Assembly: GCF_021869535.1 (NCBI RefSeq)
Contig: NW_026262701.1
Span: 35,340,001 to 35,404,000, forward strand
Origin: Mytilus californianus
Taxonomy: Eukaryota
Reading direction: 5' to 3'
Length of the DNA: 64,000 bases
The notes below the pieces were generated by a model. It searched no databases and had not been told where the DNA came from. It was given only the letters and a program-made list of their open reading frames with translations. How positions within the stretch are numbered: position 1 is the stretch's first letter; every line of letters starts with the position of its first letter. The position numbers and the translations under genes were made by a program. Of this stretch, positions 4,941-64,000 are shown piece after piece.

Positions 4941-4942
4941 TA

Positions 4943-6192: not shown

Positions 6193-6391
6193 TTTTATAA
6201 CAATTTAATTACAGTTGATTTATTTACGCACATGAAATATTTTATTCCATTTGCTATAATTCTCTCACACAAAATTATCTGAATATTACTATAAATCCAC
6301 AGAATATAATTTGCCAAAATACATTGTTAAATTCCAAATAGCACATCAATCCTTATAATAGAAATAAACTAATCCATGTTAATAATATCCA

Positions 6392-41626: not shown

Positions 41627-42482
41627 TCAAGTGCATGTTTACTTGTTTTTGTTAATATGTGTTTTTGATTGAGTTAAGCCATTTCAAATGATATTTCATA
41701 GTTTGTCTTTCTATATTGTAATGTTACACCTCTACTTTAAGTTAGGGTGAAGGTTTGCGCCTGTTAAAAAGTTTAAACCCGCATCATTTGTTTGCACCTG
41801 TCCTAAGTCAGGAACCTGTTGTTCAGTGGTTGTCGTTTGTTGATGTGGTTCATAAGTGTTTCTCGTTTCTAGTTTTTTTTATATAGATAAGACCGTTGGT
41901 TTTCCTGTCTAAATTATCAAATAAATGTGTCGTTATTCAACAGTTATGTAGAAGGTTATATAAAAAGAGAGATATGAAATAGTCTACACAAATGACAGTA
42001 ACATTTAACGAACATTAATAATGATCTAGCCACAAAATCAATGTTGAAGTCAATTCTACTGTTTCAAGATTTCAAGATAGTTCCTTCTTTATTAGAAACT
42101 ACTATAGATATCCAGTTTATACCACTTCCGAAATCAAGATATGTGAGACAAAATGTACTTTTAAATTATCAAAATGCCCATGGAAATGATGTTAAAAACT
42201 GGAAGATTTGTTTAACTGTAGATTAATAAATAACACATAACATCGTTAACACGAATACATGGAATCGTTTACCCCAATGAAAAAGTTGTCTCATCTGAAG
42301 TTAGGTTCAAAGAACCGTCCATAGTTTGCAATGAAAAGGTAAATCACTTTCTTCTTTTTTGATTAGTGTAAAACAATACCTGAGAAACGGGCCATAATTA
42401 CTATTTTGGGTGATATGAAAAAGTATAATGATAATTTCTTGGAAATCTTTCAATGGTTACAATGAAAAGCGTTATAAAAAAG

Positions 42483-42923
42483 TTAATAAAACGCAACCAA
42501 CAAAGAACATATTTATTTACAACTGAAGCCACCAATGAGCATGCAATAAGCTACAGTTAGGACCAGCAGATGATCATCATAACAAAACTAATTTGATGTG
42601 GTATTAGAACAATTTCTATGTACGTAACTACAATACCCTTTCCTTTTTCCCAAATGTGACCTACCGAATTAGACTTATTACAGGGTTTGTACTAACATGA
42701 GCAACACGACGGATGCCACATGTGGAGCAGGATCTGCTTACCCTTCTGGAGCACCTGAGATCACCTCTAGTTTTTGGTGGGGTTTGGGTCACTCAGTCTT
42801 TAGTTTTCTATGTTGTGTTTTGTGTACTGTTGTTTGTCTGTTGGTCTTTTTTTCTTTTTTTGCCATGGCGTTGTCAGTTTATTTTCGACTTATGACTTTG
42901 ATTGTCCCTCTGGTATCTTTTAT
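42483..42923 (+). repeat. Inverted duplication arm B (441 bp; intron DNA plus Naiad 3' end)
   Basis: Reverse complement of 43976-44416. Confidence 0.95.
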
Positions 42924-42941
42924 AATACATAGTACTAATAT

Positions 42942-43698
42942 ATAAATTTGATCTATGCCGAATAAAAATACAATATTAATAAAATAAAGGGGGAGAAGAT
43001 GTAAAACAATATTAGAAAGACAACTATAACCTTGGACAAAATATAAAATAAAATAACGTACACAGCTAAATATAATAATTTTGTAGTAAGGAGTACATGG
43101 AGTACGGAAATATCATTTTACAAAAAAAAATAATTTGTTGTTCATAGTACGAGAACAGAATTAAAAATTTATCGTGATACTAAATACTTAAGGTAAATAC
43201 TCAAAGGTGAGACACAAAATAAGTAAACATTGAATAACAAACATGCATTACAAATTGTGTCAACAGATCAAATTAACAGGAAAGTAGGATTTGAGAGTAC
43301 TCGCAATTCCTGAAAGCTAGTTAAAAGCCAAAACAATTAATAATAAAAACCCATGCATCAGAGACTAAAATCAACTAAAACACATCCCAGCGATTAAGTC
43401 TTTTAATGACATGACTTGTGCAATGCCAAAATTAAAGTATCGACTGGCAGTAGTATGGTTAGGATTTCACCTTATAATAAATGTGTATGATTTTATGTAA
43501 TCTCTATATAGAAAATGAACGTGGATGTGTATTTATACATCCGAAAAAAAAAACATTTGAAAAGAATACAAATTTAGTTATGTTTTAATTTGTTGATGAC
43601 AAAATTGATATTTGTGCCAATGTTAACAATATTCAAAGATATTATTACAACATTTATAAAATAACCTTTACTAATGAGTTTGTTAAAAGGTTCGATGA
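42942..43698 (-). repeat. Inverted duplication arm A'
   Basis: Reverse complement of 40870-41626. Confidence 0.95.
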
Positions 43699-43788
43699 TA
43701 TACTATCCAGACAATTATAATTTCGATTGAGGGGTATTAAATCATTACAATGAACATTATTTAATTTAAATTTGTGAAATAATTGTAG

Positions 43789-43944
43789 ACGAATGTCCTT
43801 TTGGTACATATTGGATCAACGGAGTTTGTGTTATGTGTCCTAAAGGAACTTACCAAGACGAAAGTGGACAAGTAAACTGTAAAATATGTCCTGATGGTTT
43901 AACGACACAGTACATCGCTTCTAAAAATGAAAGTGAATGCGCAG
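43789..43944 (+). CDS. GCC2/GCC3 (ephrin-receptor-like Cys-rich) exon, inverted relative to its host gene
   Basis: 156 bp, tag/gttagt borders, (D)ECPFGTYWINGVCVMCPKGTYQDESGQVNCKICPDGLTTQYIASKNESECA; missed by the ORF track. Confidence 0.9.
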
Positions 43945-43975
43945 GTTAGTAGAAACAATGTCTTGAAAAAGAGAG

Positions 43976-44416
43976 ATAAAAGATACCAGAGGGACAATCA
44001 AAGTCATAAGTCGAAAATAAACTGACAACGCCATGGCAAAAAAAGAAAAAAAGACCAACAGACAAACAACAGTACACAAAACACAACATAGAAAACTAAA
44101 GACTGAGTGACCCAAACCCCACCAAAAACTAGAGGTGATCTCAGGTGCTCCAGAAGGGTAAGCAGATCCTGCTCCACATGTGGCATCCGTCGTGTTGCTC
44201 ATGTTAGTACAAACCCTGTAATAAGTCTAATTCGGTAGGTCACATTTGGGAAAAAGGAAAGGGTATTGTAGTTACGTACATAGAAATTGTTCTAATACCA
44301 CATCAAATTAGTTTTGTTATGATGATCATCTGCTGGTCCTAACTGTAGCTTATTGCATGCTCATTGGTGGCTTCAGTTGTAAATAAATATGTTCTTTGTT
44401 GGTTGCGTTTTATTAA
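43976..44416 (-). repeat. Inverted duplication arm B'
   Basis: Reverse complement of 42483-42923. Confidence 0.95.
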
Positions 44417-44933
44417 TACAATATACAATAGTATATCAAATATATACCGAACAACAACATTAAAATATAGTACCACTAATATTTTTGAAAAAGTAAAAGT
44501 ATTCTGTACATTTTTACACAATCTTCTTGTCAACACGGACATTTGCTTCTCTCAATTTATAGAATTTCAAAACTTCAAATTTTTCATTTTCATGAAACAA
44601 ATCAGTTTTTAGAATATTCAGAAACTTAAAGTTAGTAAAGAGAAATGGACGAAAATTCAGTTGTATCTGTTTTGTCGCTGCCTTCCTTTCAAAACACTTT
44701 GTGAAAAATGCTGGATCTTAAACCTGATTTCAAACATTTTATTGGCAAACACATCCTTTAGTTTAAAAAAAATGGTTCTTCTATAGCATTAGATTAGTTA
44801 TCAGGAAACCCTTGAATTAAAATTGATTATACAAAATTGCATACGAGTAGAAAACTTGGTCTGGAAAAACGTGGCATGAAAACTACCAGAACAACGTTAT
44901 ATGATTTACAGTTAAAAGATTTTTTTTTCATAC

Positions 44934-45122
44934 CACAAATTAACTCTTGTTCGACTGTTCCTTCTGGACATGTAATGTCGATTTTTATTATAAGTGAAGA
45001 CAAGTCAGCAGAATAAATAGTGCCTTTGTCTTCTATTATCAGGACATCCGTGGTATTCAGTTGATGAAGTGACATGGTTAAATCCGTGTATGCTGTAACA
45101 ACTTCCAATAATCCCGAAGAAA
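44934..45122 (-). CDS. Linker exon ending ITCPEGTVEQELIC
   Basis: 189 bp, phase 1-1; homologous position to plus exon ending IKCPENSIPVYCNTISC. Confidence 0.85.
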
Positions 45123-46175
45123 CTTAAAATAGGACATATTTATTCTATAAGCATGTAATTGACATTCAGTTAAGCAGTAATGTTTGTCATTATAATCCAG
45201 TCAAAACACGAATGCACAATCAAAAGCGAGCCTTCATTCACCTCTCAACAACAGTGCAAAGTTTGTTATAACTTGACTAGAACAGGTACATGACCTAGAA
45301 TAAAATGCCTTTTATAAATCTGACGATCAGAAAATTTTCAAAACTGTACGTTATCTTTCTTTCATCTACTTTCAAACTTATGAGTTTGAAAGTCCCTTGG
45401 TATCTTTCGCCTCTCTTTTTCGCCAATTTCTACAATTATATGTACTTGAAGAAAATCTTTCCAAGCATACGTAAGTTATGAAACACGTGTACAACATATG
45501 AAAAATTTACTCAAATCTTGCAGTTGAAGTCCGATAAATATGCGAAGACAAACCAGGAATTTTATAATATAAAAGGTAGCTTCATATAATCAATTCCAAC
45601 AAAAGTATATAGTTTTGAATGCAAAAGTTGTTTTTCCGTCAATAGGGAACCTGTTTAATAGCCGACCATACGGTATGGGTTTTCTCATTGTTGAAGGCCG
45701 TACGGTTGCCTATAATTGTTTACATCCACTTCATTTGAACCTTGGTGGATAGTTGTTTCATTGGCAATCATAACACAACTCCTTATTTCTATGATGAGTA
45801 CTAAGTTTCAAGTAAATGCTAATTCAACTTCAATGTCAACTACCCTAAACTTTATTTTAATCTAAGATTTATAATTACTTTTACAAAACACTTTTACCAT
45901 ATGAATATGTAAATGATTCCGTAATGAGGATTCTGAGCAAAGGTATCATATTAAAGGGAGGTGTTGATATGCAATATCTTAGATGTCTGCTGTTTAACTT
46001 TTTTAAATGAAAGATGTGTTTTTACCTATATAATTGTATACATTTTCAACGATTTATTTCCCAGTGTAACACAGATGCATTGGTATTACATTGGTATCCG
46101 GTAACATGTTATCAATTGTGAATAAACGAGTCATACGCACACTAACAAAAAAAGAAGAAAAAAAAATAAACAAAC

Positions 46176-46452
46176 CTATATTGTTAGAATAAAACTCTTC
46201 CAAAATTAATGGGTGTTCTGACAGTTCAGAATAAATTTGTATAACAATTTGAACAGATGTTACAGTTGATTGCTTTCGTCTACTTTCACATCCAAACGTA
46301 GACGTGCTGACCGTACATGTATTATTCTCCACACATTGAAGGTTCTTTAAATTCTGATTCAGTGTATCAGATACGCTTTCTTCATTACTACAATCCACCT
46401 CATTTGTATGTTACAGCTGCAGTTGCCCTCACTGCTCTAGGTGAATCTGAAC
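46176..46452 (-). pseudogene. SEA-like exon with +1 frameshift
   Basis: 277 bp (3n+1) between phase-1 neighbours; RSDSPRAVRATAAVTY then frame change at TACAAATGAG to NEVDCSNEES...CESRRKQ. Confidence 0.75.
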
Positions 46453-47314
46453 CTTTCAAAATACAGAATGTTGTATTTGTGTTAGTGTTGTGTTAATTTG
46501 TGAAGTTAATTAAAAGCTTTGATTTGAAGAACGCTCTCTGGTACAAATCATATATTCTAGAAGAATAACGTATACATACAATCGTGCAACGATGAGACTT
46601 ATAAGTCATGACGTGGGCAACAGCAAACAGTTACTTAAATATTGAATAGATTACAAATGATAGCTTCTTGATTCACAAGATACTGAAAATGAACCGATTA
46701 AATTATCGTGAAAATACTTTAAAAGAAAGCTTCTGTTTATTTCTAATATATTTAAAGCATAGTTTATATTTAAACATGCCGTGAATTATTGCGGAATTTT
46801 CTGATTTGATTTTATTAAACCAAAAAAAAAGAACCTTTGTTACTAATCTGATATCATCCTCTGTATAACGTTTACTTCGCTTTGCTCACTCAAATTAAAA
46901 CTAATTACACGTTTTCGACATACATGGATATATAAAACACAACAAACACTATAAAAACTGCATTTAAAAAACGCATATTTTTAAATTCATTCCTGGTCAA
47001 ATTCAAATCAATTTTCTAGTACATTTATGTTACCACCTTGCAAAACTACTAAGTACCTTTAAAATTGAATAGGTAGGCTGCAATTGTCAAATTGATAAAT
47101 ACAATTCAACAGGAAGGACAGAATTACCTACTCCCTTAAACATCAATAGACCAGATTGATGTTACCAGTATATAATGCATTGAATGATGTGAGCATCTGC
47201 CCATTGTTGAAAGTCATTTAAGAACATGCTAATGTTTTAATTTTTACTGCATATTTATTTTCTCTATTTCAATATGATATATTGCAATACAAGTGATATA
47301 GGATAATGACTCAC

Positions 47315-47506
47315 GAGCACATGGAGGTGGAATAGCATTCCAAATATGTCCAGTTTGAGGTCCACATTCGTATTGATCAAGTGGTTGATAGTCTCTTACA
47401 AAGCTATACCCATCTTGACACGTGACCACACATGAAGTAGAATCAGATATGCTCGTACAGTTAAATCTGTTTTTGTAAGAGTATATAGTGGAATGACTTA
47501 GACAAA
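47315..47506 (-). CDS. Sushi/CCP-like exon
   Basis: 192 bp, FNC...SCVVTCQDGYSF...YECGPQTGHIWNAIPPPCA. Confidence 0.85.
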
Positions 47507-47799
47507 CTAGAATAAAAGAAATGGGTACAATTTTAAGGGATAAGAAAAACAAACATCGGAAACTATATTCTTTGTGCGCTCGTCGGGAGTTAGGGGTCTG
47601 TTATTTAATGGTTTTCGTTGGTTAATATCTGTTACATTTGATTTTCGTAAATTGAATTTAATAAATTAGGCCTTTAGTTTTCTCGTTTGAATTTTTTCAC
47701 ATTTTCATATCGAGGCTTTTTATTCGGTATGAGTTTTTCTCATCGTTGAATTGCGTATGGTCAACTATAATTACTCTTACTGTTTAGGCAATTTTTGGT

Positions 47800-48890
47800 A
47801 ATATCCATTTGACGTGGTTCGGTACTTATACATCCCGTCATTGTGTTATTGTGCTAAGGTAAATTTTTGTATTATTGTCTTTCGTTTTTGATATGTGCTT
47901 TGTCTATATGCCTTTTTTTTTTCTTTGTTGACATATTTGTTTGTTTTTATAGAGATTAAGATCATAACACAATGTTAACTGCTGTATCCCTATTTTTGCC
48001 TTCTTTATATATTATGTCTGTTTGTTTTGTTCACACATCGTTGTCAATATAAGGGAATTTTATGCGACTGTCATATAAGTGAGAGGTTTAGCTAGCTATA
48101 TAACTAGGTTTAATCGACCATTTTCTACATAAGAAAATGCCTGTACCAAGTCAGGAATATAACAGTTGTTATCCATTCGTTTGATGTGTTTGAGCTTTTG
48201 ATTTTGCCATTTGATTAGGGACTTTCCGTTTTGAATTTTCCTCGGAGTTCGGTATTTTTTTATATTTTACTTTATTCATCCACGTTAAATGAACTCTTTT
48301 TGACAGTTGTATCAATGATAATCATATCCCTTTATTTTCATATTGTTAATCCACACCGGATGCATATTATTAATCTCCCAATTGATACGATATTCCCGGG
48401 CTTGTATTTCCTATCATGATTTCCTTGATAGGGGATTGCTGCTCACAAGGAAGCTATTAAACCAAGAGTTTCAAATGGTGAAGTTGAAATCATCCCTTTG
48501 TAAATTTTACGGACGCCATCACGAGTTGGTTGACCGTTATGGAATAACCGTTTCACAGATGATATCGGATATGTTCCCTATGTCGTAACTACTATACCCT
48601 TCCCTTTTCACGAATGTGACCTACCGAATTAGACTACTTACCGGATTTGTAATAACATAAGCAACACGACGGGTGCCACATGTGGAGCAGGATCTGCTTA
48701 CCCTTCCGGAGCACCTGAGATCACCCCAAGTTTTTGGTGGGGTTCGTGTTGCTTAGTCTTTAGTTTTCTACGTTGTGTTATCTGTACTATTATTTGTCTG
48801 TTTGTCTTTTTATTTTTAGCCATGGCGTTGTCAGTTTGTTTTCGATCTATGAGGAGTTTGACTGTCCCTCTGGTATCTTTCGTCCCTCTT
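47800..48890 (+). mobile_element. Adjacent PLE 3' fragments (family 3 UTR 47800-48275; Naiad thumb plus UTR 48330-48890)
   Basis: ISQLIRYSRACISYHDFLDRGLLLTRKLLNQ and family terminus GGTATCTTTCGTCCCTCTT. Confidence 0.85.
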
Positions 48891-49007
48891 TTATTAACAT
48901 AGTATTAACTAGTCGAATTTAATAGAATGATTTCGATTATAATGTAGATTGATATTTTTTAAAGTAATGGATTGCTATACAAATGATTAATATATATATA
49001 TGATTAC

Positions 49008-49178
49008 CCGGACAAAGATCTGTATTACAAGCCTGCGATGACATGTTTGTTCCAGAGCATTCCAATCCATATAGCTCAGGTGCAGGATCATCGCAGTATC
49101 GAGCTCGGTACTGGGTTCCACCATTACAGGATTGTGAACATTCTGACCAACCTAACCACGAGCCCCATTTACCATGCA
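49008..49178 (-). CDS. TSP1 exon
   Basis: 171 bp, HGKWGSWLGWSECSQSCNGGTQYRARYC...CNTDLCP. Confidence 0.92.
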
Positions 49179-49484
49179 CTGTAATATAAAAACTTTATTG
49201 ATTCACTCTGTTCAAACGGACATAAACTATGCATTTGCTAACGCTTTTTAGGTATAATTGTAAGATTCAGTGGCTGTTATTTATTTACAATGTAATCATA
49301 TATACTAGTAGCGTTTAATAAATGCAACATATTAATCAATTATGTCTCCACTAGACTGCAAGTGATGTTTTCATGCTGCCGTCAAATTTCAATAACCGCG
49401 TTGCTCGTTATTATCAGAACTATGTTATGAACGTGCGAGAAGTCGGCTCCGAACTTTACAGCTAGAAAAGAAAACAAACACATC

Positions 49485-49845
49485 AAAGTTACCAGTATTA
49501 ATATTGTGTACGTCAGACGCGCGTTTCGTCTAAAAAAGACTCATCATTGACGCTCGAATAAAAAAGGTAAAAAAGCCAAATAAAATACGAAGTTGAGGAG
49601 CATTGAAGCCAAAAATTCTAAGAGGTTTTGCTAAACACAGCTATGGTAGAAATACAGCTATACTAGAAAATATTTAGTACTTCGAACAATTCAAAGTTTT
49701 GTAAATAGTTAATTTATAAATATGACAATATCAATGATAATTGATGTCAACACAGACGTGTGCTGTTCAGTGGGCTGGTGGAAACCTCCACCAACATATC
49801 TAAATAAACTCATCATAGATACCAGAATTTAGATTGTGTAAGCCA
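49485..49845 (-). mobile_element. Second retrozyme-like family, decayed monomer with hammerhead at 49510-49555
   Basis: Minus strand GAGCGTCA-ATGATGA-GTCT-TTTTT-AGAC-GAAA-CGCGCGTC-TGACGT; partial second unit about 330 nt away. Confidence 0.7.
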
Positions 49846-49960
49846 TTGCAAAACGTATGTTTTCCTTTTGTTCTTATTTTCATATCATATGTTGTTGAGT
49901 TCTATTTTATATACGTAACCAACATCTTATTTTATACACTTCTTAAAAAAATTGACTTAC

Positions 49961-50194
49961 CAATTTGTGTTTCACAAAACGTTCCTGTACAATTTGAATC
50001 ACATACACAGGAATAATTGGCAAAATTGCTCACACAAGTTGCATTATTTTTACATCCATTTACTTTGCAAAAGTTTGGTGGAATGTCACAATTAGCACCA
50101 CTATACCCACTTAGACATTGGCAACTGTAACCATTCTGTTCGCTTATACAGATGTTGTCATTGCCACAAGGACTTGTCTTACATTCATTATAAA
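49961..50194 (-). CDS. Double EGF exon
   Basis: 234 bp, YNECKTSPCGNDNIC...CQCLSGYSGANCD...CVCDSNCTGTFCE; missed by the ORF track. Confidence 0.92.
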
Positions 50195-52578
50195 CTGAAC
50201 AAAAATATGAAAAGGCTCTAGTAAAGTAAGAGAACGATACATGTTCATACTTGAAAATGTAAGCATATTTTGTGATTTAATACTAAGTCAATTGTAAGTA
50301 CAAAAAAAAGTTTATTTGGTGTCTACCTACATTTCCAAATAAGACTGGTATATTTTCTATTCGCATATATATCTTTTGTGACTATACATAATATAAAAAT
50401 AAGAAGATGTGGTATGATTGCCAATGAGATTACTTTCCAAATGAAACACAGTGACACAAAAAGTACTAGTAACAACTATAGATCACCGTACGGCCATCAA
50501 CAATGTCTTATTTAAAATTATAAAAATGAGAAAATAAAATCGAAATATGATAGACAGCGACAAACGACAACAGTTACTACTGGGTTACAGGTTTCTGTTT
50601 TGGGATATGCACTATAACAATTGACGTATTTAAGATTCGTTATAATGTTCCAACATAACATTTCTGTATTTGCACCATGAAATTTACTCTCAGTACAGAC
50701 ACACCTGTGCAACAGGAAAAGTGAAATGCCTGGCAGCAAAAAGATATAAACTAAAATTACAAGTATTCTATTTTTAAGGTTATTAAAAACGTTTCTTGGT
50801 TTTTATGAGCCTTTCCTTGCCCCAGATCGAGTACGGGAAAAATAAACAAACCCCTGAGTTTAATTTGGTACAGTCGACTCGGTTACTCTTGAATCATTAT
50901 TTGTTGTACAGATATGATATTTGTCTCTTTAGTGTACATATCAGTTAATATAATACAATTCAACTGTAAAGTGAAGGTGACATCTCAAATATTGTATCGT
51001 ACTTAGTTGGATTTTACACCATGCTTTAAATCTTTTTCAAGTTGCACGGTTTTGTCAGAGATAACTTTGTGGTGTCAACAAATATGAAAAAAAAAATGAA
51101 TGATGCATTTTTACTTGATTGTGTGTGATCAACTCTTCCCTAACAGAACCTAAGTAAAAGCTCCAATAATTAGTTTAAAATGGTTCAACGACTAAGTAAT
51201 GAGCACAGTAGAAAATAACGAAAATACCAAATGCAACAAGTACCGACAGAAGAGTACTCGCTGGTACTCAAAACTTAATAAACCAAGCCTCTCAGAAAAA
51301 AACGGATTAAAGGTAAACATGTCAAATTGGTTTTTTTATTGTTCCATTATAAATTAGCACCTTCGTATTCTTGTTTAAATTGTTTTATGCCAGGGCCTTT
51401 TAAAGACTTCTTTACGGGGTTGGTTTTGATCATTGTTAAAGACTGAACGGTGGCCTTTAGTTGCTTACTTCAACTTTATTTGGACTCTGAAAATAGTTGT
51501 CTCTCTTTGGCAATCTAACAACATCTGCTTAATTTTATATTCAAGAATGTTTTAATTTAAAGGATTAGTAATTGTAAATGGATCGTATCTTAATTAACGA
51601 GCTCATAAACAAACATTACCATAAAACGAGGATGTTATATCCCATTTGTTATAAAATTTCTACAGACACAGCCAAACTTCCAAACGAAATCTTTTCAATT
51701 ATTAAAGGATTAATTCAAGATTTAATGAATTTGTGGTAATTTTGACGGAATGATTAATCAGTTATGTATCACTACTAACATACGCAAAAAAAACAAGTAG
51801 GAATATATACACACCGTAAGAAGGACCAACGGAATATCCTCGTCCAAAAAGAAAAATTTACAAGTACTTATAAACCCTTGAATTTTGGGGTTTTGAGCGT
51901 TCCTGATTAAGGTAGATCAAGAAAAAAAGCTTTAGACGAACGAAATCTATAAACTTTCAACTAGTGTTATTTTTATCGACTTAAGGGAACAAAATGGTCA
52001 CTTTTGGCTTAAACTTTAGTAAAGGATTTACCTAGTTTGAAGATAGTTCTATGTTCCACCTTTCCATGTTAATCTGTATATCCTTTTCTATTTTGTTTTG
52101 CTTTTTTTATTTTCAAGTTTGGATGTTATTCCGACATCTTGTATTCTATACTCTTGTAAAGTTTTAAGGAAAAGTAAAATTATTATAAAAACAAGGGCAA
52201 TAGAAATAAAGATGGACAGAAAACAAAACAACAAAAACAAAATGTATGAAGAGATAATAACTATATATAGAAAAACTAAAGATTGAGAGCCACGAACCTA
52301 CCAAAAAACTGTTAGCACAGAGATTTGACTCGTCTTTCTTACCTTTAATGGTGTTGAAGCCATCGATGACTAACAAATCACGACTATTTTCGAAGGTGAG
52401 ACAAAAAACGGGAATGATGGTTCTTTTAAGGGTGAGCAGTTCTTTCTCCACAATTGACACCAGTTGAGTTGCTGATGAAGCCGTCTGTTCATAAGTCTAT
52501 ATCATATATTTTAAAATGAAACTAGTTCTATAAATGATAAAAACATGAAGTCAAAATTTGAAAAGTGAAAACAATTAC

Positions 52579-52764
52579 CGTCACATTTTGAAAAGGAAAG
52601 CTCTGTGTCTATCGTATCTGCCGTAAAAACATCATTCATCGTAAGCAAAGCATTGCTCATATTTGACGAACAATTTTCTGCGAGTTGGTATATCAAAGTA
52701 TCAGACAAAATACCAGTATCAGACAAAATACCATTGTCAAATACAAGCCCTGTAAAAGTCAATC
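52579..52764 (-). CDS. Last pentraxin/LamG exon
   Basis: 186 bp, (G)LTFTGLV...C...SKCD, same position and ends as plus exon GSGFSGY...C...GQCD. Confidence 0.75.
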
Positions 52765-53246
52765 CTGCAAATAAAAAAAAAACTAAAAGTGTATAATTTA
52801 ACCATTCTTTTGTCTAAAAGATTATTATTCATACCACTAGAAAAAACCTCTTGGCCAATAATTTTACTTAGATTTCGTGAGGATGGAATCGCATAGTAAC
52901 ATTAACGGAACTAATGTTACTGCATCAGATGAGCATTTTGACTATAAATGTCGCTAGGGATACTTGAGACAAAATTATTTGATAATTCAAACTTCAAATT
53001 ATCTGACTTTTTTTCTGTCTTACACTTTCAATACTAGTAGATCTAGTATTTCTCATGATAACAAAAACTTTGGGAGTTATCCGATACAATTTGAAGTTTG
53101 TTACTTCCTCACCTCACAGTTTGTAAGATTTTTAACAAGAATTATGTAATGGTTTTGTATTTCGAACTGTTCACCCAGTTTCCACACGTCCTATATTTAA
53201 CTTGTTTAAAAAATACTTAATTCGAACAAAGAAAATTTATTACCAG

Positions 53247-53347
53247 CTGCCTTCGCCTTGATTTCTAAAACTGGATTTGTTGAAAATTCAGTTTCTGCGT
53301 CTGTAGAGGTATCAAATATATGTTCGGTTTTCTTCAGTCCATTAATA
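53247..53347 (+). CDS. Probable SEA-like exon
   Basis: cag/gtaagt, phase 1 to 0, matches phase-0 start of 53878. Confidence 0.5.
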
Positions 53348-56300
53348 GTAAGTATTGATAATTGGATACAAAATAATGATTTACCACAATGATTAATAAA
53401 CTTCTGAGATTACTTTAAGATTGGTTCTTTGTGTCTTTTGTCTTTTTTATTTGTGCTTCGTGTCGATCTGCATATTGTTTTTACAAAAATCAGGCCAATG
53501 TTTTTTTTTTCATTTGAATTGGTTTACATTTTTGTCAAATATCGGGGACGTTATAGCTTACAGTACAATATAGGTTTTCATTATTGTTGAGAGCCATATG
53601 GTGACCTATAGTTGCTTTCATCCACGTAATATTGTCTCTGGTGGATAGTTGTTTCACTGGCAATTATACCACATCTCATATTTATAATTTTTTTTATTGA
53701 CAGTTTATATCCCATATTTAATCAAAGAATAAATCTGCACACTTTATCTTGTGTTCTTTTCTTCGAACTCTATGATTGATGATATTCTAGTAACACATTG
53801 AGTAACACATTGATTCTTTTTTATACAAAAGTGAAAGTATTTTTTTAAATACGCATCGAATACTAGTAATATTTCAGGTTGTTTGCGGAGATACCTCCTG
53901 TAAGCGTTCAACTGGCAACCTGAAAGTTGATGTGGAAATTTATTTTAGCATAGAAAACACAACTGTTTCGTCGATCAAATATGAAGAAGAAGTACTGACT
54001 GTAACAGAACTGATGTATGTAATTGAAAATGAGTTCTCTTCAGAGAACGTGACACTGGATAGCGGAAACCATACTACAGACTTTTTAGGAATTTCATCAA
54101 ATGGACTGGAGATTAAATGTCCCGAAAATTCCATTCCTGTGTATTGTAATACTATAAGTTGTTGTAAGTATACTGATATTTTTATTAAACTACTAATAAA
54201 ACAAATATGTAAATGACTTTTTTTACAAATAGTGATCTAGAAATTTTAAGGGGAAAAAGTAGTCTTGTACATGCAGTGCTCATATATGACCATGTAATCA
54301 CTAAAATGTTTAACTCAAAGGTAAATTGAAAAAGGGGAAGTCAATAAAAACTGACAAAACAAAGCTCTATTGTATCAAGCAAGTACGATTGAACATACAA
54401 ATTAGGTAAAGAAAAATGTATTTAATTAAGGCAACATTAGTTTACCGATGCTCAAATCTCATAAATCGTTTAAGATGATAGAAATCAATGTAACACACAG
54501 AAACCGAGGCGTCGTATAAACTCCAAATGATCGAAATCAGGTGTTTTACAGGGTAAGCGTCACCTGCTATGTATAAATCACCGCCATGCGATTCTATACT
54601 AAGTCATTCAACTTGTAGGCCCTTTAGTCTTATTTTCAATCTTCATATTTTGGTTGACCACTATGTAATATTTGTTTTGCAGTTGACGACCAAGGATCTT
54701 TTTATCTTTTCATGACATCAATAAATGCGACTTATCACCGGATTTTTACTCGTTATGAGCAACACGACGGATAACATTATTTAACCAGGAACTGCTCCAT
54801 TTTTTATTATATACTCGCTTTTACCCCCGGTTTTGTTTGTGGTAATTGTGTTTCTCATATAGTTTTCCTTGTAGTATTATTTCGGACTGTTGTTTGTTTG
54901 TTCTAGTTTTCCTTTGGTCAATGTGTTGACCCTCTTTCTTCGACATCTGGTTATTCTTTGTCACCTCCTATCTCCCTGTCCCCGTGGTGCCTTTTTCCTT
55001 TTTTCCTATGATCAAGACCATAATTTTTTAATTTAGTTAATAGAATGTTTCCATAGCTCATCAAAAAATAATGAAAAAGAAATATCTTCAATTTGTCATT
55101 CAAGTGCCTTGTCCAGCTGGATCATATTATGATAGTGTAGTGAGTGAATGCATCAGGTGCAAAAGAGGATCCTATCAGCCAAATTCTGGACAAAGAAGTT
55201 GTATTTCATGTCCCAAAAGGCTGATAACAGCTATAGAAGGGGCTATTGAATCATCAGAATGTGAAGGTAATATCTCTCAAATACTTTCTTTAATTTTATC
55301 AAATCAACTTATGATGTCGACCGTTGGTTATATCTGTAAAACAGATAATTTTATGTAAATTTTAACTCTCAAAGTAATGCCAAATTTAAATATTAAAATG
55401 AAATTAAGATTTAATCTTATGAATAGTTATTTCTTTTATATGTTTATCGGTATCATTAAATCAACATTGTTTCTTCAATTTTTAACTAAAATAATTGTCT
55501 GCAAATAAATCAAAGTTTGATATTGAAAAATAAGAATAAGGAGATGATTACCAATGAGACAACTATCCACCAAAGTTCAAATAAAGTGGATGTAAGCAAC
55601 TATATGCAACCGTACCGACTTCAACAATGAGAAAAACCCATACCGTATAGTCGTCTATAAAAGGCACCGACATGAAAAATATGAAACATTTCAATTGAGA
55701 AAAATAACGGCATAATTTATAACAAAACAATAAACGAAAAACAAATATGACTGACATGAACCAACGACAACCACTGAACTACAGGCTCCTGACTTGGGAC
55801 AGGCACATAAAGAATGTGGCGGGGTTAAACATGTTTGTGAGCGCTCAACCCTCCCCTAACTTTGAACAGTGGTGTAACAGCACAACATAAGAACAAACTA
55901 TAAAAATCAGTTGAAAAAGGCTTAACTCATCAGATCGATAAAACCCATTTCAGTAGAAATCTATAATGAAACCATGAAGTTTATGATAACAGTCACAGTT
56001 TGTATACTCGTATATTACCTTATAGCAAAACACTATCTAAATTGAATTAAATATGCAACCTATATTGTATTGAACTTTGCAGAAGCCTGTGTTCCTGGAA
56101 CATGGTCTACAACTGGATTACCACCTTGCATTGAATGTGATATCGGATATTATGAAGAAACTTATGGATCTGTGAATTGTTCAAAATGTCCCGGTAACAA
56201 AATTACCTTAATGGAAAGTAGAAGTAATGTGTCAGAATGCTTTGGTAAGAAACTCTTATTAATAGTCGAATGATACATTTGAAACATAAAGGAACACGTT

Positions 56301-59300
56301 TATGATGCAGTTCATTAATTATAAATGACAACACCAATAATAAAAAGGTCAATTTTTTTTTACAGATTTCACGTGTAATTTATTTTCATTTAATTAATAT
56401 TCTGTATATATCTTAATACTTTAAATGCGAAACACGATTGATAATTTTGGGACGTCCGAATCGCTTTTCTAGGTTACTTTCAGAAGGAATGCTCAAACCA
56501 AAACAATTATTTGAAAGATAAGAATGTAAAGGTATTTGAATAAGTACCAAAAAGGACATACAAATAATCTATCGAAAATCTATTTTTCTTAATAATTTTC
56601 TTAGTAAATTCCAAAAGAATAAACAGAGAGTATAACAAAAGTTATTTTACAGGAAATATCAGAACTAATGAGCTGATGATTCTTTCGGGAATATTATCGA
56701 CTAAGCGTTTTTTGTAGATGAGTTTATCTAAGTTTAATTCTTATATTAACCAATAGAAACATTTTAACCCCAACAACGAATTATAAGATGAAAATTCTTT
56801 TTTTTTTTTTGTAGATTTTGACATAGGGTTTCCTAATATGTCAGACGTTAGTTACACGGACCTTGAGATTTCGACCGTAACTTTCCCTCTCTTGGTAACA
56901 TTGCATGCAAAATGCGACACGAATTCCTCTGGAACTATCTTCCGCGTATCCTCAGACGTGGTTGTACTTTTAGAGATTGATGTAAAACAAGTAGTATTTT
57001 ACAAGTAAATAAAATATTTCAAGAATTAAATAGACAAGCTGCTTAAAAGACACCCGACATTAGTTTATCACTATAGCAAATTTAGTCTCGTGTTTTTTAT
57101 TTTTATTTCTCCAAACTATTTGGATGTTATCCTTAATTTTAAATATTCTGTTAATGTCGAACTCAGAACTATAATTATTTTTCAACGTTAAACAAAACAT
57201 CTAAAGACTCTCAAACATTTTATTCTGAAGTGTTTTGATCTTTAAAATAAGCATATATTTCATTGCCCGAAAAAATATATGCTAACGTGAAATACTTGTC
57301 CAGTATCAACACATTTTCATAGAAATAACGGGAGAGAAAGAACTGTGTGTACTAGTCCAAAAAAGACCCCAAAACTATATATTTGCAAACCTATTGAAAT
57401 AGTTATGAATTATTTTTTGTTTTCTAGAAAAGAGTTGTCTTTCTTCACATTACCGAATCTGAAGCCATAGTACAAGTTTCCCGGATTATTCAGATAAACA
57501 ATTTCGCATTAATGTAAATAGGACGTTTTTATTCATTTCATTCATTTTCCTTTTAGTAAAACATTTCAGATGCCAGTAGATTTGTGTCAACGATGGGTGT
57601 ATATTGAGATACATGTAAAACAGAATTTTACCATTATGTATATTGATAGGAAAGAAATATTCAAAACATTGATCAACTTTGATTTAAATGAGATCTCCGG
57701 CTTAAATGTTACCTTAGGAGGTAAATATGTTTTTTGCTGGAAAGTAAAGTTTTAATGTCTTTGATGTGTAAACAATCGTTAACAAATGACTGTACCAAAA
57801 ACCACAGAAAATAAACATTACTAAAACATATAAAGATAAAAGTAATCATACAATTTCTCCTTATTTTATAGTAAATGAAAAGTCTTAATATTGTTCTTTG
57901 TGAGTACAGCTAAAAATTATGTTTAGGCTTCAAACGTTATGTTTTCAATCTATCGGTCAGGTTATATTTCATGTGTTGTAATAGATACCGTATAGAAATT
58001 CTGAATTTTTAGCATCTACACAAACATTAAACTTTCACCTCCTTTTATCCGTAGGGAATTTACTTATTAATGGTGTTGTTTTATTAGATATGAATGAAAA
58101 TTACAAAAATCAATGTTTTCGTTTAACATAGTCAAATATTTTTTTTTTTCATCAGGGAGTGGTTTTAGTGGATATATTTCACAGTTTAACATAAGGTCGT
58201 TAACAGCTAACACAACAGAAGGTTACACGTTCCCCATGTGCAATAGTGAAGACATAGAAGATGGTTATGTCAACTGGGAAGACTTTCCATATAGTAATCT
58301 TGTCAATGCCTTCATTAATATTCCTGGCCAGTGTGATGGTTTGTATACTCTACAAATGATTTGTATATACCAACTAAGTATTGCGCATGTATTCTATATA
58401 CAAATATAAGTATATAGGCATGTAAATGTGTTAAATATGAGGAAGCTGTAGATGGCATTTGCATTTATAGATTTAACCACAGTGGACATTTACAGGTACA
58501 TGCGAACGAAAGTCCTAGCACCTTTTTACATCTTGAATCTATAAATGGTTACCAGTTTTCAACTGAATCATTGAGAATTGGAATAAAACTCAATTATGAA
58601 TCAGACTATCTTCTCTATTTGCATCACAATGCCACACGAATATCATCCACAGTATAAAAAACATTCAGAATAATATGAAGTTTTCTGACTTGTCATATCT
58701 TATTGTTATTGACGATTATTGATATTGGACCAGATGGACAATACATTTCATTCCGTAAGGTCACATTATAAGTCGTGTGAATTAAGTAAAACTAAGATTC
58801 TGACTTCATTTATGCGCTTTAGACCCATTTTAATATTGATACATTCGAACACTATATTTATTTGCCACCCCTTATTGTGTTATTAAAGTTTATTGATACT
58901 TTCAAAAGTTTCCTCCATAACATTTTAAGTTGTACATAGAAGCAAAGTGAGCAGTACATGTTTCTTAAGTTTTCTTTTCATTTCTCGAACATGCTACACA
59001 GAAATATCTGTTCAGTTATTCACATCATATGAAGGGTCTCAGTTAGACAGCGTGTACGTTATTTCAAGAGATCTTGTATTTCAGTCGTTTGATTGAAATT
59101 TTAGAAATATACAAAAGGTATAATTGGATTGATTACAGATTGATAAATATTGCTGTAACTTTCAATAGCGTGTAAGATCACGTTAAAGAGTTTAAAACTC
59201 AACGACGTTGGCCTGTCTATGGTTAAGCTAAAATTTGTCAGTACTATCTTTAAAATATACCGTTTTAACAATGGTGCGTTACTTTTGAGTTTGGGTGTTC

Positions 59301-62300
59301 CTGGAAAGGCGCTTCAGACAAACGGAATAAATTAAGTGTTATTGTCATTTAAAAGATGGGTAGGGTGATTGTGTATATGTAAGTGTGGGTGATTCATTTA
59401 TTAAACACAGTGATATACGATTAATTCATGTGTCATTTGATTATTTTTTTAATAACAGATGTAGATGATTGTATGAGTTATCCTTGTGGAAACGGAACTT
59501 GTACGGACAAACTAGGAGGCTACAGATGTACCTGTCTAGGGGGATTTACTGGACCAAACTGTAATGTTAATATCAATGATTGTATCGCTTGTGCATGTCA
59601 AAATAACGCTACATGTTTGGATGGTATTTCAGCCTACTCATGTCTGTGCATTAATGGATATAAGGGAGAGCTTTGTGAAATTGCTTTAGGTTGGTATAAT
59701 TTGTTCTTATTTTTTATTGCATAATACCATTTTTAAGTAATTTGGGGAACATTGAACTTAAGGAAACTATTAATCATGATATGTCTGCAACATATCTCTT
59801 TGGCCGGGTTGTTGTCTCTTTGACATATTCCCCATTTCCATTCTCAATTTTATTTAATTCCTGGCTGAGTAAGAAACTTGAAACAACAAATGTAGTTAAT
59901 TATTATAATGGTTTATCATAATTTTGTTATTTTTTGCAACGAGAAAAGAATAATTAGTTTTGTCTATTACATTATCGATTAAGCCTCTGTGTTTTCCATT
60001 TTGTTTGAAAAGGGGTCACCTGTTTCATTACATAATTTTTCAAAAGTTCGTTTAAACATGTTTTTCGATTTTGATGTTGTAAAATAGAGGCGAAAGATAC
60101 CAAAGGGACATTAAAATAAAAAAAAATATAAGACAAAACGAAAAACGACGAAGATGCAAAAACACAGTCTACAAAAAACTTCGTAGGAAATTAAGGACTA
60201 AGCAACACGAACACTACAAAAAACTGAGGGGATCTGAGATGATACGGAAAGGTAAGCCGATCTGGATCCGAATGTTGCTGTCGTATTGCTCTTGATAAGT
60301 AATAAAGGTGATAAAAAAGTATCAACAAAAATACCGCCCTCAAAGATAAGTGTCATTCACAAATGATCCACTGATGTCACAATCGTGGAAAAGGGTACGA
60401 GATTGTGGGTAGAATAATTGGAACATACCCGTGGTTATCTATGACAGTAACAGTCAACCAAATCGTGATGGCGTTCGTAATACTTTCGAACGGATGACTT
60501 CAACTATTCTAGTTTGTTCAATAACTTCCTTGTAAGCAGCAACACTCTATCAGGGAAATCATGATAGGAATGCAAGCTCTGGAATATTGTATCAATTTGG
60601 ATATACACTCCATATGCAGGCGCTGCTGGTATGTTGCTACATATGAAATCATCTTTGTTGTCCTTAAGTTTTTTGCCAACCGACCCTCATTGTAAATGTC
60701 TAGTTGCAAGAAAAGACATGAGACAAACTTCTGTTGTATCCTTTATTTCAAGTTCGATGTGATAGTTGCGACATCGTCTATATAGCGGACCATGAAGCTA
60801 AAGGGTAATGCTACCTTCGTTTGATTTTTCCAGAGAACCTCCTGTATGAAGTTTGCATCATGATTAGACGTTTGGTAGTGTACCATTAAAGAACATTAGT
60901 CGGGGATGTAGCTCATTGAAAAAATATCCAACGAAAAGACATTTTTGTTAAAAGTTAAAAATACAAGGGTAAAACGTTATCGAATAAAAAAAAGAAATTT
61001 CTCGTCCTTAAGGTTCACGAATTTTAATTCTATAACACTGTTTTGATATTTTCAAGTACACATGGCGGGTCAAACTAAAGTGTTAAGATATCACCAAAGC
61101 TATGAATATTACAACAGCCAAACGTGACTTAGATATGTGAAGCATTACTCACTCATATTTTTACTACTACACTTTTTCATGTATTTAGTTGATGGTGGAT
61201 GGACTCATTGGGATAATTGGACAGAATGTTCTACAAGTTGTGGTTATGGGACAAGACAAAGAGGCAGATCTTGTTCTAATCCTCTACCTGATAATGGGGG
61301 CCAAAAATGTAATGGAACTGATACAGAAATTGGGGACTGTCTTTCAGAACCATGTCCAGATACAAAATGTACACGTTAAATTTCACAGTCATGCAAAAAG
61401 GAGCTGTGGAGTATGAATTAATGGAAATCCAACGATAAATAATCTGAAAGACATATATATATATCACCATACGGTGTTCAACACTATATGCTACAAATAA
61501 TATGCCAAGCTCTAAATTAGTTAAGACAGGTGAAAATAAGAGTGACTATCAAGATCTACCTTCAAGACCAATTTCGCAATTGGTTAACACATAACGATAT
61601 AATCAACACGAAAACAACCACTGAAGACGTCTTGGACCTTGACTGGGCATAATTATCCCTCCCCTATGTAATAGTATTTTTTTCTGTTAGAAAATAGGAC
61701 AAATTGTCAATATTCAATTCAGAGCGTATAAACAATTTGTTAATAATAGTTCTTACTACAGTAATTTATTAAACATTTAATGACTATGATTTATTAGTAG
61801 AAATATTCTTATTCCATTTTATAGTCTTCTGCCTTAAATTTTTGGAGAATTCCTGTTGGTTGTATGAAATAACCATTATCATAAAGTTGATATAGAAATA
61901 TATGACAGGTCCATAGTGCTTACATTGGAATTGTGTGTCGATCATTTCAGAATGCATAGAACTACGAATCACTCTTCCCTTTTCTGTAATGAATCAAACA
62001 ACATGATTGTATGTTATCACAACTGTGATGACGGTTATTGGTTCGATCAGGATGTCAAGCCTGATTATTGGTGTGGAAATAAAACATTCCATTTGTGGGA
62101 TTTTCAAACGGAGGAAAATCCTTATGCACGACTCCCATCTTGCTCAGGTAAGTAATGGACCACTTTTGATATCTTAAATTGTCTTTTCGGCTAAACTTAT
62201 TACAAATATAGAATTTTCTCTATTTCAATGATTACTGGTTAATGATTAATGATTAACTCATGTTAATTAATAGAAAAAGACTTTTTAATAATGTGATTTT

Positions 62301-62662
62301 CAAAATCATTATTCTCTCCATCTATGAACGAATTTTAAAAAGAAAACATATGAGTTATTCAGTTATACAAACGTTCGTTTTTGAATATATTCTATGCTTT
62401 TTAGAAATTCAAGAGTCGTTGATGATTTATGTGAACTATACTTCTTTTTACGACCTATGGGAATGCGAAAGTGAAACAGAAATGACAATAGCATCAAAAA
62501 TAAGCAATGGATATAAAGAACTATCATGGTATATCTCATCATCTTGCCTTATGACAAACTATGAGATTCATAATTGTAATGAAAACGAACAGCGTACCAG
62601 GCGTGATATCAGCAATGTGAACATTGGATTTACGGTAACCCTTACCTGCAATACCACAAAAC
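53247..62662 (+). CDS. Run of internal exons of a modular SVEP1-like protein (SEA-like, linker, GCC x2, pentraxin/LamG, EGF x2, TSP1, sushi-like, SEA-like); no start or stop exon seen
   Basis: AG/GT-bounded exons that chain in phase; same module order as the minus-strand part. Confidence 0.8.
53878..54163 (+). CDS. SEA-like/linker exon
   Basis: VVCGDTSCKRSTGNLKVDVEIYF...IKCPENSIPVYCNTISC; cag/gtaagt. Confidence 0.8.
55105..55266 (+). CDS. GCC2/GCC3 exon 1
   Basis: 162 bp, PCPAGSYY...CIRCKRGSYQPNSGQRSCISCP. Confidence 0.9.
56083..56244 (+). CDS. GCC2/GCC3 exon 2
   Basis: 162 bp, ACVPGTWSTTGLPPCIECDIGYY...CSKCP. Confidence 0.9.
56815..57004 (+). CDS. First pentraxin/LamG exon (donor uncertain)
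   Basis: Long T-tract tag acceptor, DFDIGFPNMSDVSY...SSGTIF. Confidence 0.65.
57570..57720 (+). CDS. Pentraxin/LamG exon
   Basis: CQRWVYIEIHV...MYIDRKE...LNVTLG; cag/gtaaat. Confidence 0.75.
58156..58338 (+). CDS. Last pentraxin/LamG exon
   Basis: 183 bp, GSGFSGYISQFNI...VNWEDF...GQCD. Confidence 0.85.
59459..59689 (+). CDS. Double EGF (calcium-binding type) exon
   Basis: 231 bp, DVDDCMSYPCGNGTC...NINDC...CLCINGYKGELCE. Confidence 0.92.
60085..60965 (-). mobile_element. Degenerate Naiad-type PLE 3' fragment
   Basis: ISKLIQYSRACI motif and family 3' terminus AGAGGCGAAAGATACCAAAGGGAC. Confidence 0.75.
61189..61359 (+). CDS. TSP1 exon with mutated donor
   Basis: [28 protein letters not shown]...EPCP; 171 bp like the minus TSP1 exon, but followed by AT instead of GT. 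Confidence 0.85.
61917..62147 (+). CDS. Sushi/CCP-like exon
   Basis: LFC...CYHNCDDGYWF...YWCG...LWDF...RLPSCS; gtaagt donor; acceptor approximate. Confidence 0.8.
62405..62662 (+). CDS. SEA-like exon with furin-type RTRR site
   Basis: 258 bp, tag/gtaaga, CNENEQRTRRDIS. Confidence 0.8.
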
Positions 62663-64000
62663 GTAAGATTAAGATAGTTTATAATAATCCCTATGAAAGG
62701 CTGGGTGTATATAAACTTTTTAACAATTTTGGAAGCTTAAAATGAAAAGTGATTCAGATTTTTTCGTTCGTGTTTTGTTTTGTGGATCCATATTTTTCAT
62801 TCACGTTATAACGCATAGCTGGTTTAGTATTGTTAAGCTGTATGTTACTATAATGTTAATTCAAATGTAAACGAATTTTCAAATAAGATAGCACTTAATA
62901 ATTTTAACCGTTATTATATGTGGGTTCTATAATGTTCATGAAATTCAAATCTTTGTATGATCTTATCATGGACAAATGATTAAATAGAACAGAGGTTACT
63001 TTTTCCTATTATTACAAAAAACCAACCGGACATTTGAGTTTACTCCCGTTTTTCATTACGTTCGTATGTGTGAAGGACGATATTTGATAAATTAAGATAA
63101 TGATACAAAATGTGTGTCCTGCCAGTGATTGATTCTGTCAGTGTAAAAGTGCAATATTGATTGCCAAAAAATAAGTCCATAGTTCGGAAAATACGAAAAA
63201 TATATAAAAGCATTCCAACTTTTTTCTTCATATGTTTATTCTTGATAATGAAGATGTTTCTGTCCAAGTTTCGAAACATTGAATGAATATTTAACAAAAT
63301 TAATAATGTCTTTAAAAAATTATACCAGACTGAACATTTTTGTAAATATTAACTTGGGAAAAATAGTCCATCTATCAATAAAATACTGTAAAATGAAACT
63401 AAAAAAATACTGAAGTTGTTTCCCCTTAATCATTAACATTTTCTGTCACAGTTTTTTAAAATAATTTGTCGGTTTTACATAATTACTGATGTTTTAAAAA
63501 GATTTAACGAAGCATTATATCTTAATGTTCACTGCCAGACAAAAATTAACAGCATTTGTCTGTAAAATACAAAAAAAAATAATATATATATTTTCGAAAT
63601 TTTTTTCTGGATACTGACTTTGGACTGATAAGCTGCTGTCTTGTCTCAGTTTTATGAAATTCTATGAAGGTTTGACAAAGTAATTGATGTCTAAATATCT
63701 TTAACCCCAGGCTGAACCTAAATGTTGACAACGACGACGCAAACGCCAACGACGGAATTAGGATTGTTTTGTCAAGCTACAAAACATATACATCCAGGGG
63801 TTAATGTAGGATTTTCTGTGTCTCTTCTCATTATCAACATTCTCTCACAGTCAAAGATACAAAAAATAGGGGTGTAATCTGTAATTTTACCGATTGTCTC
63901 CGATTCCCGATTGCGATATTTTGACTGATTCTGGATTGGCATGGCTAGTTGATGATTATCCTGTCAACGCATCCGGTCTCGCTCCATTTGGAGTATATTC

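What the first reader, a model, noticed from the sequence alone, without database searches (positions are those of the whole stretch)
52579..53347. Back-to-back internal exons: breakpoint of a larger intragenic inversion
The minus run starts with an internal acceptor at 52765 (last pentraxin exon only; earlier pentraxin exons are missing) and the plus run starts with an internal acceptor at 53246 (possibly 52871). No signal-peptide exon or room for two 5' ends lies between them. Both runs follow the same cyclic module order. If the plus run were re-inverted it would feed into the minus run, giving one long repeated-module receptor ending in the TM exon.
Basis: inference. Interest (0 to 1): 0.7.

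Follow-up and report, generated by a model that had tools for sequence, protein, structure and literature searches.

The report
Two truncated mussel genes fused head-to-head

Summary
The minus-strand exon at 52579-52765 is confirmed by five paralogues on another chromosome. The supposed plus exon at 53246-53347 is better read on the minus strand. It is the 3' third of the preceding exon of the same module, with the family's conserved G|GTAA donor and phase. Contigs from a related mussel keep Sushi-like, X and linker exons contiguous. Their homology to the window stops at about 53343, so the junction lies at 53343|53344.

The plus gene ends in its own transmembrane exon and tail, which NCBI annotates as a 159-aa Mytilus californianus protein. 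The plus gene's missing upstream exons have no orthologue-level copy anywhere in the assembly. The minus gene's missing first module exon is absent from 224 kb around the site. The two runs belong to different paralogue lineages (34-41% identical to each other, 52-64% to genes elsewhere).

Best reading: two separate genes, both 5'-truncated, most simply by one deletion between divergent neighbours. The mechanism is inferred, and an assembly artefact is not excluded. This is ordinary for a mussel genome with much presence/absence variation, so interest is low.

The parts
52579..52765 (-). Gene M, third exon of the three-exon 'pentraxin-like' module (PTX3). It carries an in-frame 18-nt tandem duplication at 52698-52733.
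   Evidence: tblastn with C88 paralogue exons gives E 1e-10 to 1e-8; own-genome search; alignment A2 shows 35-40% identity; phase-1 acceptor and donor are conserved.
52766..53245 (-). Gene M intron between PTX2 and PTX3 (480 nt). It is not an intergenic gap.
   Evidence: It is flanked by the conserved donor G|GTAATA at 53245-53244 and the acceptor at 52766-52767. The paralogue introns here are 418-440 nt (coordinates).
53246..53343 (-). Gene M, surviving 3' part (about 33 codons) of the second module exon (PTX2).
   Evidence: tblastn with three paralogues gives E 0.006-0.07. A profile of five paralogues ranks it the top hit of 224 kb, E 0.002. Exon end and phase are conserved. Alignment A3.
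53344..53353 (+). Junction, plus the last ~4 nt and the GTAAGT donor of gene P's lost X exon.
   Evidence: The related-mussel contigs L032/L033 align from 53343 rightwards. Identity is 0.7-0.9 to the right and 0.3-0.45 to the left of about 53340, while L032 and L033 stay 0.8-1.0 identical to each other through the X exon.
53348..53877 (+). Gene P intron between the lost X exon and the linker exon. It holds a high-copy MITE-like repeat at 53473-53689.
   Evidence: It is collinear with L033 at 71% identity over 906 nt. The repeat has dozens of copies at 75-78% identity.
53878..54163 (+). Gene P, linker exon (linkB). This is the first complete exon of the plus run.
   Evidence: It is 73-76% identical to the related-mussel proteins P0007/P0008 and 38-41% to four C143 paralogues. 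Acceptor atatttcag|GTT and donor T|GTAAGT.
55044..62742 (+). Gene P body. The ORFs holding its exons are: Ephrin_rec_like/GCC (55044-55355, 56046-56270), three-exon module (56787-57005, 57522-57752, 58098-58406), EGF x2 (59425-59721), TSP1 (61128-61376), Sushi-like (61868-62152) and X (62257-62742).
   Evidence: Pfam hits; self-comparison. Beyond the window the gene continues with linkB' 64184-64303, GCC 66254-66409, TM 68169-68264 and tail 69310-69381.
43770..52578 (-). Gene M body downstream of the junction. The ORFs holding its exons are: EGF x2 (49935-50276), TSP1 (48940-49194), Sushi-like (47247-47600), X (46057-46410), linkB' (44830-45123) and a GCC exon (43770-43946) that lies flipped on the plus strand. 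Ten Ig exons follow at 24994-10677.
   Evidence: Pfam hits; self-comparison; 100% inverted repeats around the flipped exon.

Best explanation
Window position 53343|53344 is the junction of two different, divergently oriented paralogous genes of an SVEP1-/hemicentin-like modular surface-protein family in Mytilus californianus. Both genes have lost their 5' parts.

Gene M (minus strand) is cut inside the second exon of its three-exon 'pentraxin-like' module. It continues leftwards through EGF, TSP1, Sushi-like, linker, GCC and ten Ig exons.

Gene P (plus strand) is cut at the very end of its X exon. It continues rightwards through linker, two GCC, the three-exon module, EGF, TSP1, Sushi-like, X, linker and GCC exons to its own transmembrane exon, short tail and stop.

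Shown: the junction position, the identity and strand of the flanking exon remnants, P's own 3' end, and the absence of P's upstream exons from the assembly. Inferred: the mechanism. The simplest is one deletion that removed both promoters, both sets of 5' exons and the intergenic DNA between two head-to-head neighbours, leaving two promoterless gene remnants on this haplotype. A more complex rearrangement with loss would leave the same result.
For: - M side: the PTX3 exon is confirmed by paralogues. The PTX2 remnant on the minus strand is the single significant profile hit in 224 kb (E 0.002). It lies 480 nt upstream of PTX3 and has the family's conserved G|GTAA donor and phase 1.
- P side: the related-mussel contigs L032/L033 carry Sushi-like, X and linkB exons contiguously on one strand. 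Their DNA homology to the window begins at 53343 and runs to 54216. Their X and Sushi-like exons hit nothing in the 224 kb region.
- Missing parts: in the whole genome those exons find only C143 paralogues at 45-55% identity, against 73-76% for linkB. A profile of C88-type first-module exons finds nothing significant from -60 to +164 kb.
- P's own end: the TM exon has strong splice sites. NCBI protein P0009 [Mytilus californianus], on a contig of the same length as C121, maps to 64184-64303, 66254-66409, 68169-68264 and 69310-69381.
- Different lineages: M's EGF and TSP1 are 52-60% identical to C88 genes but 34-41% to P. P's GCC2 is 64% identical to C143 genes.
- Local layout: the gene order is L(+) M(-) P(+) TRIM(-) R(-), with TM exons at about -32.0 kb and 111.3 kb for L and R. 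Head-to-head M/P fits an alternating layout.
- Assembly and biology: there are no N bases in the window. The assembly is a HiFi primary pseudo-haplotype with 2.73% heterozygosity and 67% k-mer completeness (PMC9710001). Mussels show massive presence/absence variation (PMC7653742, title and abstract listed).
Against: - The ancestral head-to-head orientation of M and P is not shown in any outgroup, because the related contigs are only 1.5 kb.
- No orthologue of M was found. A search of 1.8 billion representatives with the PTX3 exon gave only spurious repeat hits. Absence of M's 5' part genome-wide therefore could not be tested at orthologue level.
- The PTX2 remnant match is short (34 residues, 35-42% identity).
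- Whether L032/L033 are strict orthologues or close paralogues of P is inferred from 71-80% nucleotide identity, including intron.
Confidence: 0.6

Rival explanations
1. One long repeated-module receptor gene on the minus strand was split by an intragenic inversion. Re-inverting the plus run would feed it into the minus run.
For: Both runs follow the same cyclic module order. The predicted plus-strand linker and GCC exons do lie right of the window. Another small inversion, a flipped GCC exon between 100% inverted repeats, lies 9 kb away.
Against: The plus run ends in its own TM exon, tail and stop. No first or second module exons, second breakpoint or minus-strand 5' exons follow it; a TRIM-NHL gene and a separate Ig-array gene do. 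The displaced Sushi-like and X exons are absent genome-wide. M and P are of different paralogue lineages.
Confidence: 0.04
2. An inversion between two neighbouring genes, or another complex rearrangement. Two tandem minus-strand genes were broken by an inversion whose other breakpoint lies more than 110 kb away. The displaced 5' parts were later lost or sit on unassembled or alternate-haplotype sequence.
For: The junction joins opposite strands, as an inversion breakpoint does. The locus shows other inversion-type events. The primary assembly holds only about 67% of the read k-mers, so sequence may be missing.
Against: It needs two events (inversion plus loss) where one deletion suffices. No reciprocal junction or P-type Sushi-like/X exons exist anywhere in the assembly. 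There is no M-type first module exon within 224 kb. The neighbouring family genes already alternate in orientation.
Confidence: 0.18
3. Assembly artefact. A chimeric contig or mishandled haplotypes joined two unrelated stretches in opposite orientation and dropped the sequence between them.
For: The genome is highly heterozygous and was assembled as a purged primary pseudo-haplotype. A nearby segment (40870-44416) has two 100% identical inverted duplications, which can be an assembly signature. No independent copy of the junction could be found.
Against: The window has no N gap. Contig N50 is 16 Mb from 13-kb HiFi reads. Both sides of the junction are unique sequence, an exon remnant on the left and a donor plus intron on the right. 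The nearest repeat is 130 nt away, only about 215 nt long, and shared with the related species. Haplotype switches do not create strand flips.
Confidence: 0.13

Closest known systems
Gene presence/absence variation and hemizygous deletions in Mytilus (Gerdol et al. 2020, PMC7653742; PMC10514466)
   Same: It is a structural loss that removes gene sequence on one assembled haplotype of a mussel, in an expanded, fast-evolving surface/immune-type gene family.
   Different: Here the loss is partial and truncates two neighbours at once, inside exons, leaving two promoterless remnants. Hemizygosity itself was not tested.
SVEP1-like / hemicentin-like modular extracellular proteins (Ephrin_rec_like/GCC2-GCC3, HYR, Sushi, EGF, pentraxin, TSP1, Ig). 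NCBI names the 3' fragment 'signal peptide, CUB and EGF-like domain-containing protein 3'.
   Same: Pfam-supported Ephrin_rec_like, EGF, TSP1 and Ig exons. Weak Sushi on the paralogue and related-mussel copies of this exon type (E 0.0015, just under the cut-off; the window's own copies gave no Pfam hit), and HYR in a C143 paralogue. One domain per exon.
   Different: A single-pass TM exon ends the genes. The module order is cyclic (Sushi-like, X, linker, GCC, GCC, three-exon module, EGF, TSP1). The pentraxin identity of the three-exon module is unverified. No VWA or CUB domain was seen.
Classical balanced inversion breakpoint inside a gene
   Same: Sequences of opposite strand abut, and exon runs point away from each other.
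   Different: There is no reciprocal junction, the displaced parts are absent from the assembly, and the two sides are different genes.

Membership tests
   The plus run has its own TM exon (68169-68264), tail and stop, as in NCBI model P0009.
   There are no P-type Sushi-like/X exons in 224 kb or genome-wide at orthologue level. There is no M-type first module exon in 224 kb.
   M's EGF and TSP1 are 52-60% identical to C88 genes and 34-41% to P. P's GCC2 is 64% identical to C143 genes.
Deletion fusing two divergent neighbours (presence/absence-type structural variant) | Both genes are truncated at one shared junction, with internal exons or introns abutting. | tested here: met
   The M PTX2 remnant ends, and homology to the P X-exon donor and intron begins, at 53343|53344.
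Deletion fusing two divergent neighbours (presence/absence-type structural variant) | The missing segments are absent from the genome rather than relocated. | tested here: inconclusive
   Met for P. For M only the 224 kb neighbourhood could be tested, because no M orthologue was available.
Deletion fusing two divergent neighbours (presence/absence-type structural variant) | The ancestral or alternative allele has intact head-to-head genes. | not testable with these tools
   The related contigs are only 1.5 kb.
SVEP1-/hemicentin-like modular surface proteins | Ephrin_rec_like (GCC2/GCC3), EGF, TSP1 and Ig domains. | tested here: met
   Pfam E-values run from 1e-7 to 1e-14 on single exons.
SVEP1-/hemicentin-like modular surface proteins | Pentraxin domain. 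| tested here: inconclusive
   No Pfam hit for any of the three exons in M, P or the paralogues. A profile of the third exon found no pentraxin in the PDB. The spliced three-exon sequence was not searched, and that joined step was left out.
SVEP1-/hemicentin-like modular surface proteins | Sushi/CCP and HYR domains. | tested here: inconclusive
   Sushi scores E 0.0015, 19.3 bits against a cut-off of 20.7, on related-mussel and paralogue exons. HYR (E 7e-13) appears only in a C143 paralogue, not in M or P.

The most novel reading that the evidence does not exclude
The junction may have created a new chimeric 5' exon. The antisense of M's PTX2 remnant (53246-53347, plus strand) is open. It has an AG acceptor, uses P's retained X-exon donor and is in frame (phase 0) with the linker exon at 53878. 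A transcript starting in or left of M's intron could therefore give gene P a new N-terminal segment made from the antisense of another gene's exon. That would be an observable case of exon birth at a structural-variant junction. Alternatively, the junction could be one allele of a segregating inversion or deletion polymorphism that switches two receptor genes off together.
Probability: 0.05. Interest if true: 0.55.

Novelty: new member of a known kind. Interest (0 to 1): 0.22.

Why it matters
It corrects a misleading picture: there is no giant receptor split by an inversion. It gives a base-pair-level example of how structural variation erodes an expanded surface-receptor family in a mussel, with one event disabling two neighbouring paralogues. 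It also flags annotation problems. NCBI models only a 159-aa 3' fragment of gene P, and the antisense of an exon remnant can pass for an exon. This is useful for curating the M. californianus annotation and for studies of presence/absence variation, but it is not surprising biology.

Tried and rejected
- The exhaustive representative search with the 62-aa PTX3 exon gave six hits.
- Pfam on single module exons and a PDB profile search gave no pentraxin support.
- BLAST of window exons against the 224 kb region for extra copies of PTX1, PTX2, X and linker exons found nothing beyond self hits.
- A DNA search of the genome with the related contig's Sushi-like/X segment found no match.
- A word search with the junction-spanning ORF found no candidate, so the junction could not be confirmed in independent data.
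Paralogue structure therefore rests on 3-kb loci.
- The plus-strand reading of 53246-53347 as a diverged X exon was considered because of one shared 13-mer. It was rejected because the orthologue X peptide gives no hit and identity is at background level.
- Reading the minus-strand ORF 53943-54236 as M's PTX1 was considered. It was rejected because the plus frame matches four paralogues and the related mussel and is followed by GCC exons in all of them.
- A TM exon for gene M was not found inside the window. One candidate lies at about -4248 to -4120, beyond an LTR retrotransposon, and was not followed up.
- The spliced (joined-exon) model was deliberately not built or searched.

Full report
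**Setting.** The window is G000:C121:35340001-35404000. It is AT-rich (about 31% G+C) and has no N bases. P0009 is named by NCBI 'signal peptide, CUB and EGF-like domain-containing protein 3 [Mytilus californianus]'. It sits on a contig of 122,239,455 bases, the length of C121. I assembled 224 kb around the site, window coordinates -60000 to 164000.

**The two runs.** Pfam on single exons confirms the following:
- Ephrin_rec_like (GCC2/GCC3) at 55044-55355 and 56046-56270 on the plus strand.
- EGF at 59425-59721 (plus) and 49935-50276 (minus).
- TSP1 at 61128-61376 (plus) and 48940-49194 (minus).
- A GCC exon at 43770-43946 that lies on the plus strand inside the minus run.
- Ig domains in the minus-strand array at 24994-10677.

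The shared module order is Sushi-like, X, linker, GCC, GCC, a three-exon module, EGF x2, TSP1. No Pfam or PDB search of its single exons supports that name.

**The minus side of the finding.** The exon at 52579-52765 is real. Five paralogues on contig C88 have the same exon (alignment A2, 35-40% identity). In those paralogues it is preceded within about 1.3 kb by two further exons of the module and followed by EGF and TSP1.

Three paralogous second exons hit the window's minus strand at 53242-53358 (E 0.006-0.07 in 224 kb). A profile of five of them makes that ORF the only significant hit of the whole region (E 0.002, next 0.41). The match ends at a G|GTAA donor in phase 1, as in every family member examined. 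The third exon's acceptor is also phase 1. So 53246-53343 is the 3' third of gene M's second module exon, and 52766-53245 is its intron.

**The plus side.** The linker ORF 53806-54213 has four paralogues on C143 (38-40% identity). In these it is preceded by Sushi-like and X exons and followed by two GCC exons, all on one strand. Two proteins from public mussel read sets (P0007, P0008; 73% identical) lie on 1.5-kb contigs L032 and L033. Those contigs carry Sushi-like, X and linker exons contiguously.

Their DNA aligns to the window from 53343 to 54216. Identity is 0.7-0.9 to the right of about 53340 and 0.3-0.45 to the left. L032 and L033 stay 0.8-1.0 identical to each other through the X exon. 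The X-exon peptide finds nothing in the window. The plus gene (P) therefore keeps only the last ~4 nt and the GTAAGT donor of its X exon. Its intron follows (53348-53877, with a high-copy MITE-like repeat at 53473-53689), and then the linker exon 53878-54163.

**The junction.** It lies at 53343|53344.

**Testing the inversion model.**
- The linker (64184-64303) and GCC (66254-66409, Pfam E 1.3e-12) exons are there.
- What follows is a short exon, a TM exon (68169-68264, strong splice sites) and a tail (69310-69381). This is exactly NCBI model P0009.
- Further right lie an intronless TRIM-NHL gene (76003-78924, minus) and an independent minus-strand Ig-array gene with its own TM exon at 111.3 kb.
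- No first-module exon of the C88 type occurs anywhere in the 224 kb.
- The Sushi-like and X exons that should have been displaced find only C143 paralogues genome-wide. Identity is 45-55%, against 73-76% for the linker exon.

A balanced inversion is therefore not supported.

**Relationship of the two runs.** M's EGF and TSP1 are 52-60% identical to the C88 genes but only 34-41% to P. P's second GCC is 64% identical, and its linker 41%, to the C143 genes. The runs are different paralogue lineages, each represented elsewhere by separate genes with the same module order. They are not two halves of one gene, and they are not a recent inverted duplicate.

**Most likely history.** The locus reads L(+), M(-), P(+), TRIM(-), R(-), so M and P face each other head-to-head in an alternating layout. 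One deletion from the middle of M's second module exon to the end of P's X exon explains everything seen. Both 5' parts are missing, no reciprocal junction exists, and P's upstream exons are absent from the assembly. This step is inferred, because no outgroup contig is long enough to show the ancestral orientation.

Mussels are known for massive presence/absence variation (PMC7653742, title and abstract listed). This primary assembly represents one pseudo-haplotype, so a hemizygous deletion allele is plausible.

An inversion followed by loss (about 0.18) and an assembly artefact (about 0.13) remain open. The artefact is unlikely for three reasons. Both sides of the junction are unique sequence. 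There is no gap. The nearest repeat is short and shared with the related mussel.

**State of the genes.** Both remnants lack promoters and signal-peptide exons. Gene M also has a flipped GCC exon between two 100% identical inverted duplications, already noted by earlier readers. Gene P's second linker exon changes frame near 64180-64212. The NCBI model starts at an internal ATG at 64184 and covers only the last 159 residues. Both are probably pseudogenes or fragments.

**Verdict.** The junction is real but ordinary. It is mislocated by about 100-600 nt in the finding, and its interpretation as an intragenic inversion is refuted.

Noticed in passing
window 40870-44416: Two interleaved pairs of 100% identical inverted repeats (757 nt: 40870-41626 / 42942-43698; 441 nt: 42483-42923 / 43976-44416) surround the GCC exon 43770-43946. 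That exon lies on the plus strand inside the minus-strand gene. Earlier readers have already noted this.
   Followed up: partly
window 52698-52733: An 18-nt perfect tandem duplication inside gene M's PTX3 exon. It adds six in-frame residues (GILSDT x2) that are absent from all paralogues.
   Followed up: partly
window 53473-53689: A MITE-like repeat of about 215 nt with dozens of copies across the genome at 75-78% identity. It also seems to be present at the same place in the related mussel contig L033.
   Followed up: partly
L004:184-303 (window coordinates 64090-64312): Gene P's second linker exon appears to change reading frame near 64180-64212. The NCBI protein model P0009 starts at an internal ATG at 64184 and covers only the last five or more exons of gene P.
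   Followed up: partly
L009:2003-4924 (window coordinates 76003-78924, minus strand): An intronless 974-aa ORF with RING, B-box and NHL repeats (a TRIM-NHL type gene). It lies between gene P and the next Ig-array gene.
   Followed up: yes
window 3-908 and 4936-6204 (minus strand), extending left of the window: Long ORFs that look like the aspartic protease and gag-like parts of an LTR retrotransposon (judged by eye from the translations; no domain search run). They are inserted downstream of gene M's last Ig exon. A possible TM exon of M lies beyond it, at about -4248 to -4120.
   Followed up: no
flanks: about -60000 to -31859 (plus strand) and 111240 to 156399 (minus strand) in window coordinates: Two further family members with arrays of more than 20 Ig exons each and very similar TM exons. 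The local order is L(+) M(-) P(+) TRIM(-) R(-).
   Followed up: partly
G000:C143:57.99-58.34 Mb and G000:C88:33.45-34.00 Mb: Two clusters of paralogues of this family. C143 has four plus-strand P-type genes interleaved with minus-strand members carrying HYR and Sushi exons. C88 has five M-type genes, three on the plus strand and two on the minus strand.
   Followed up: partly
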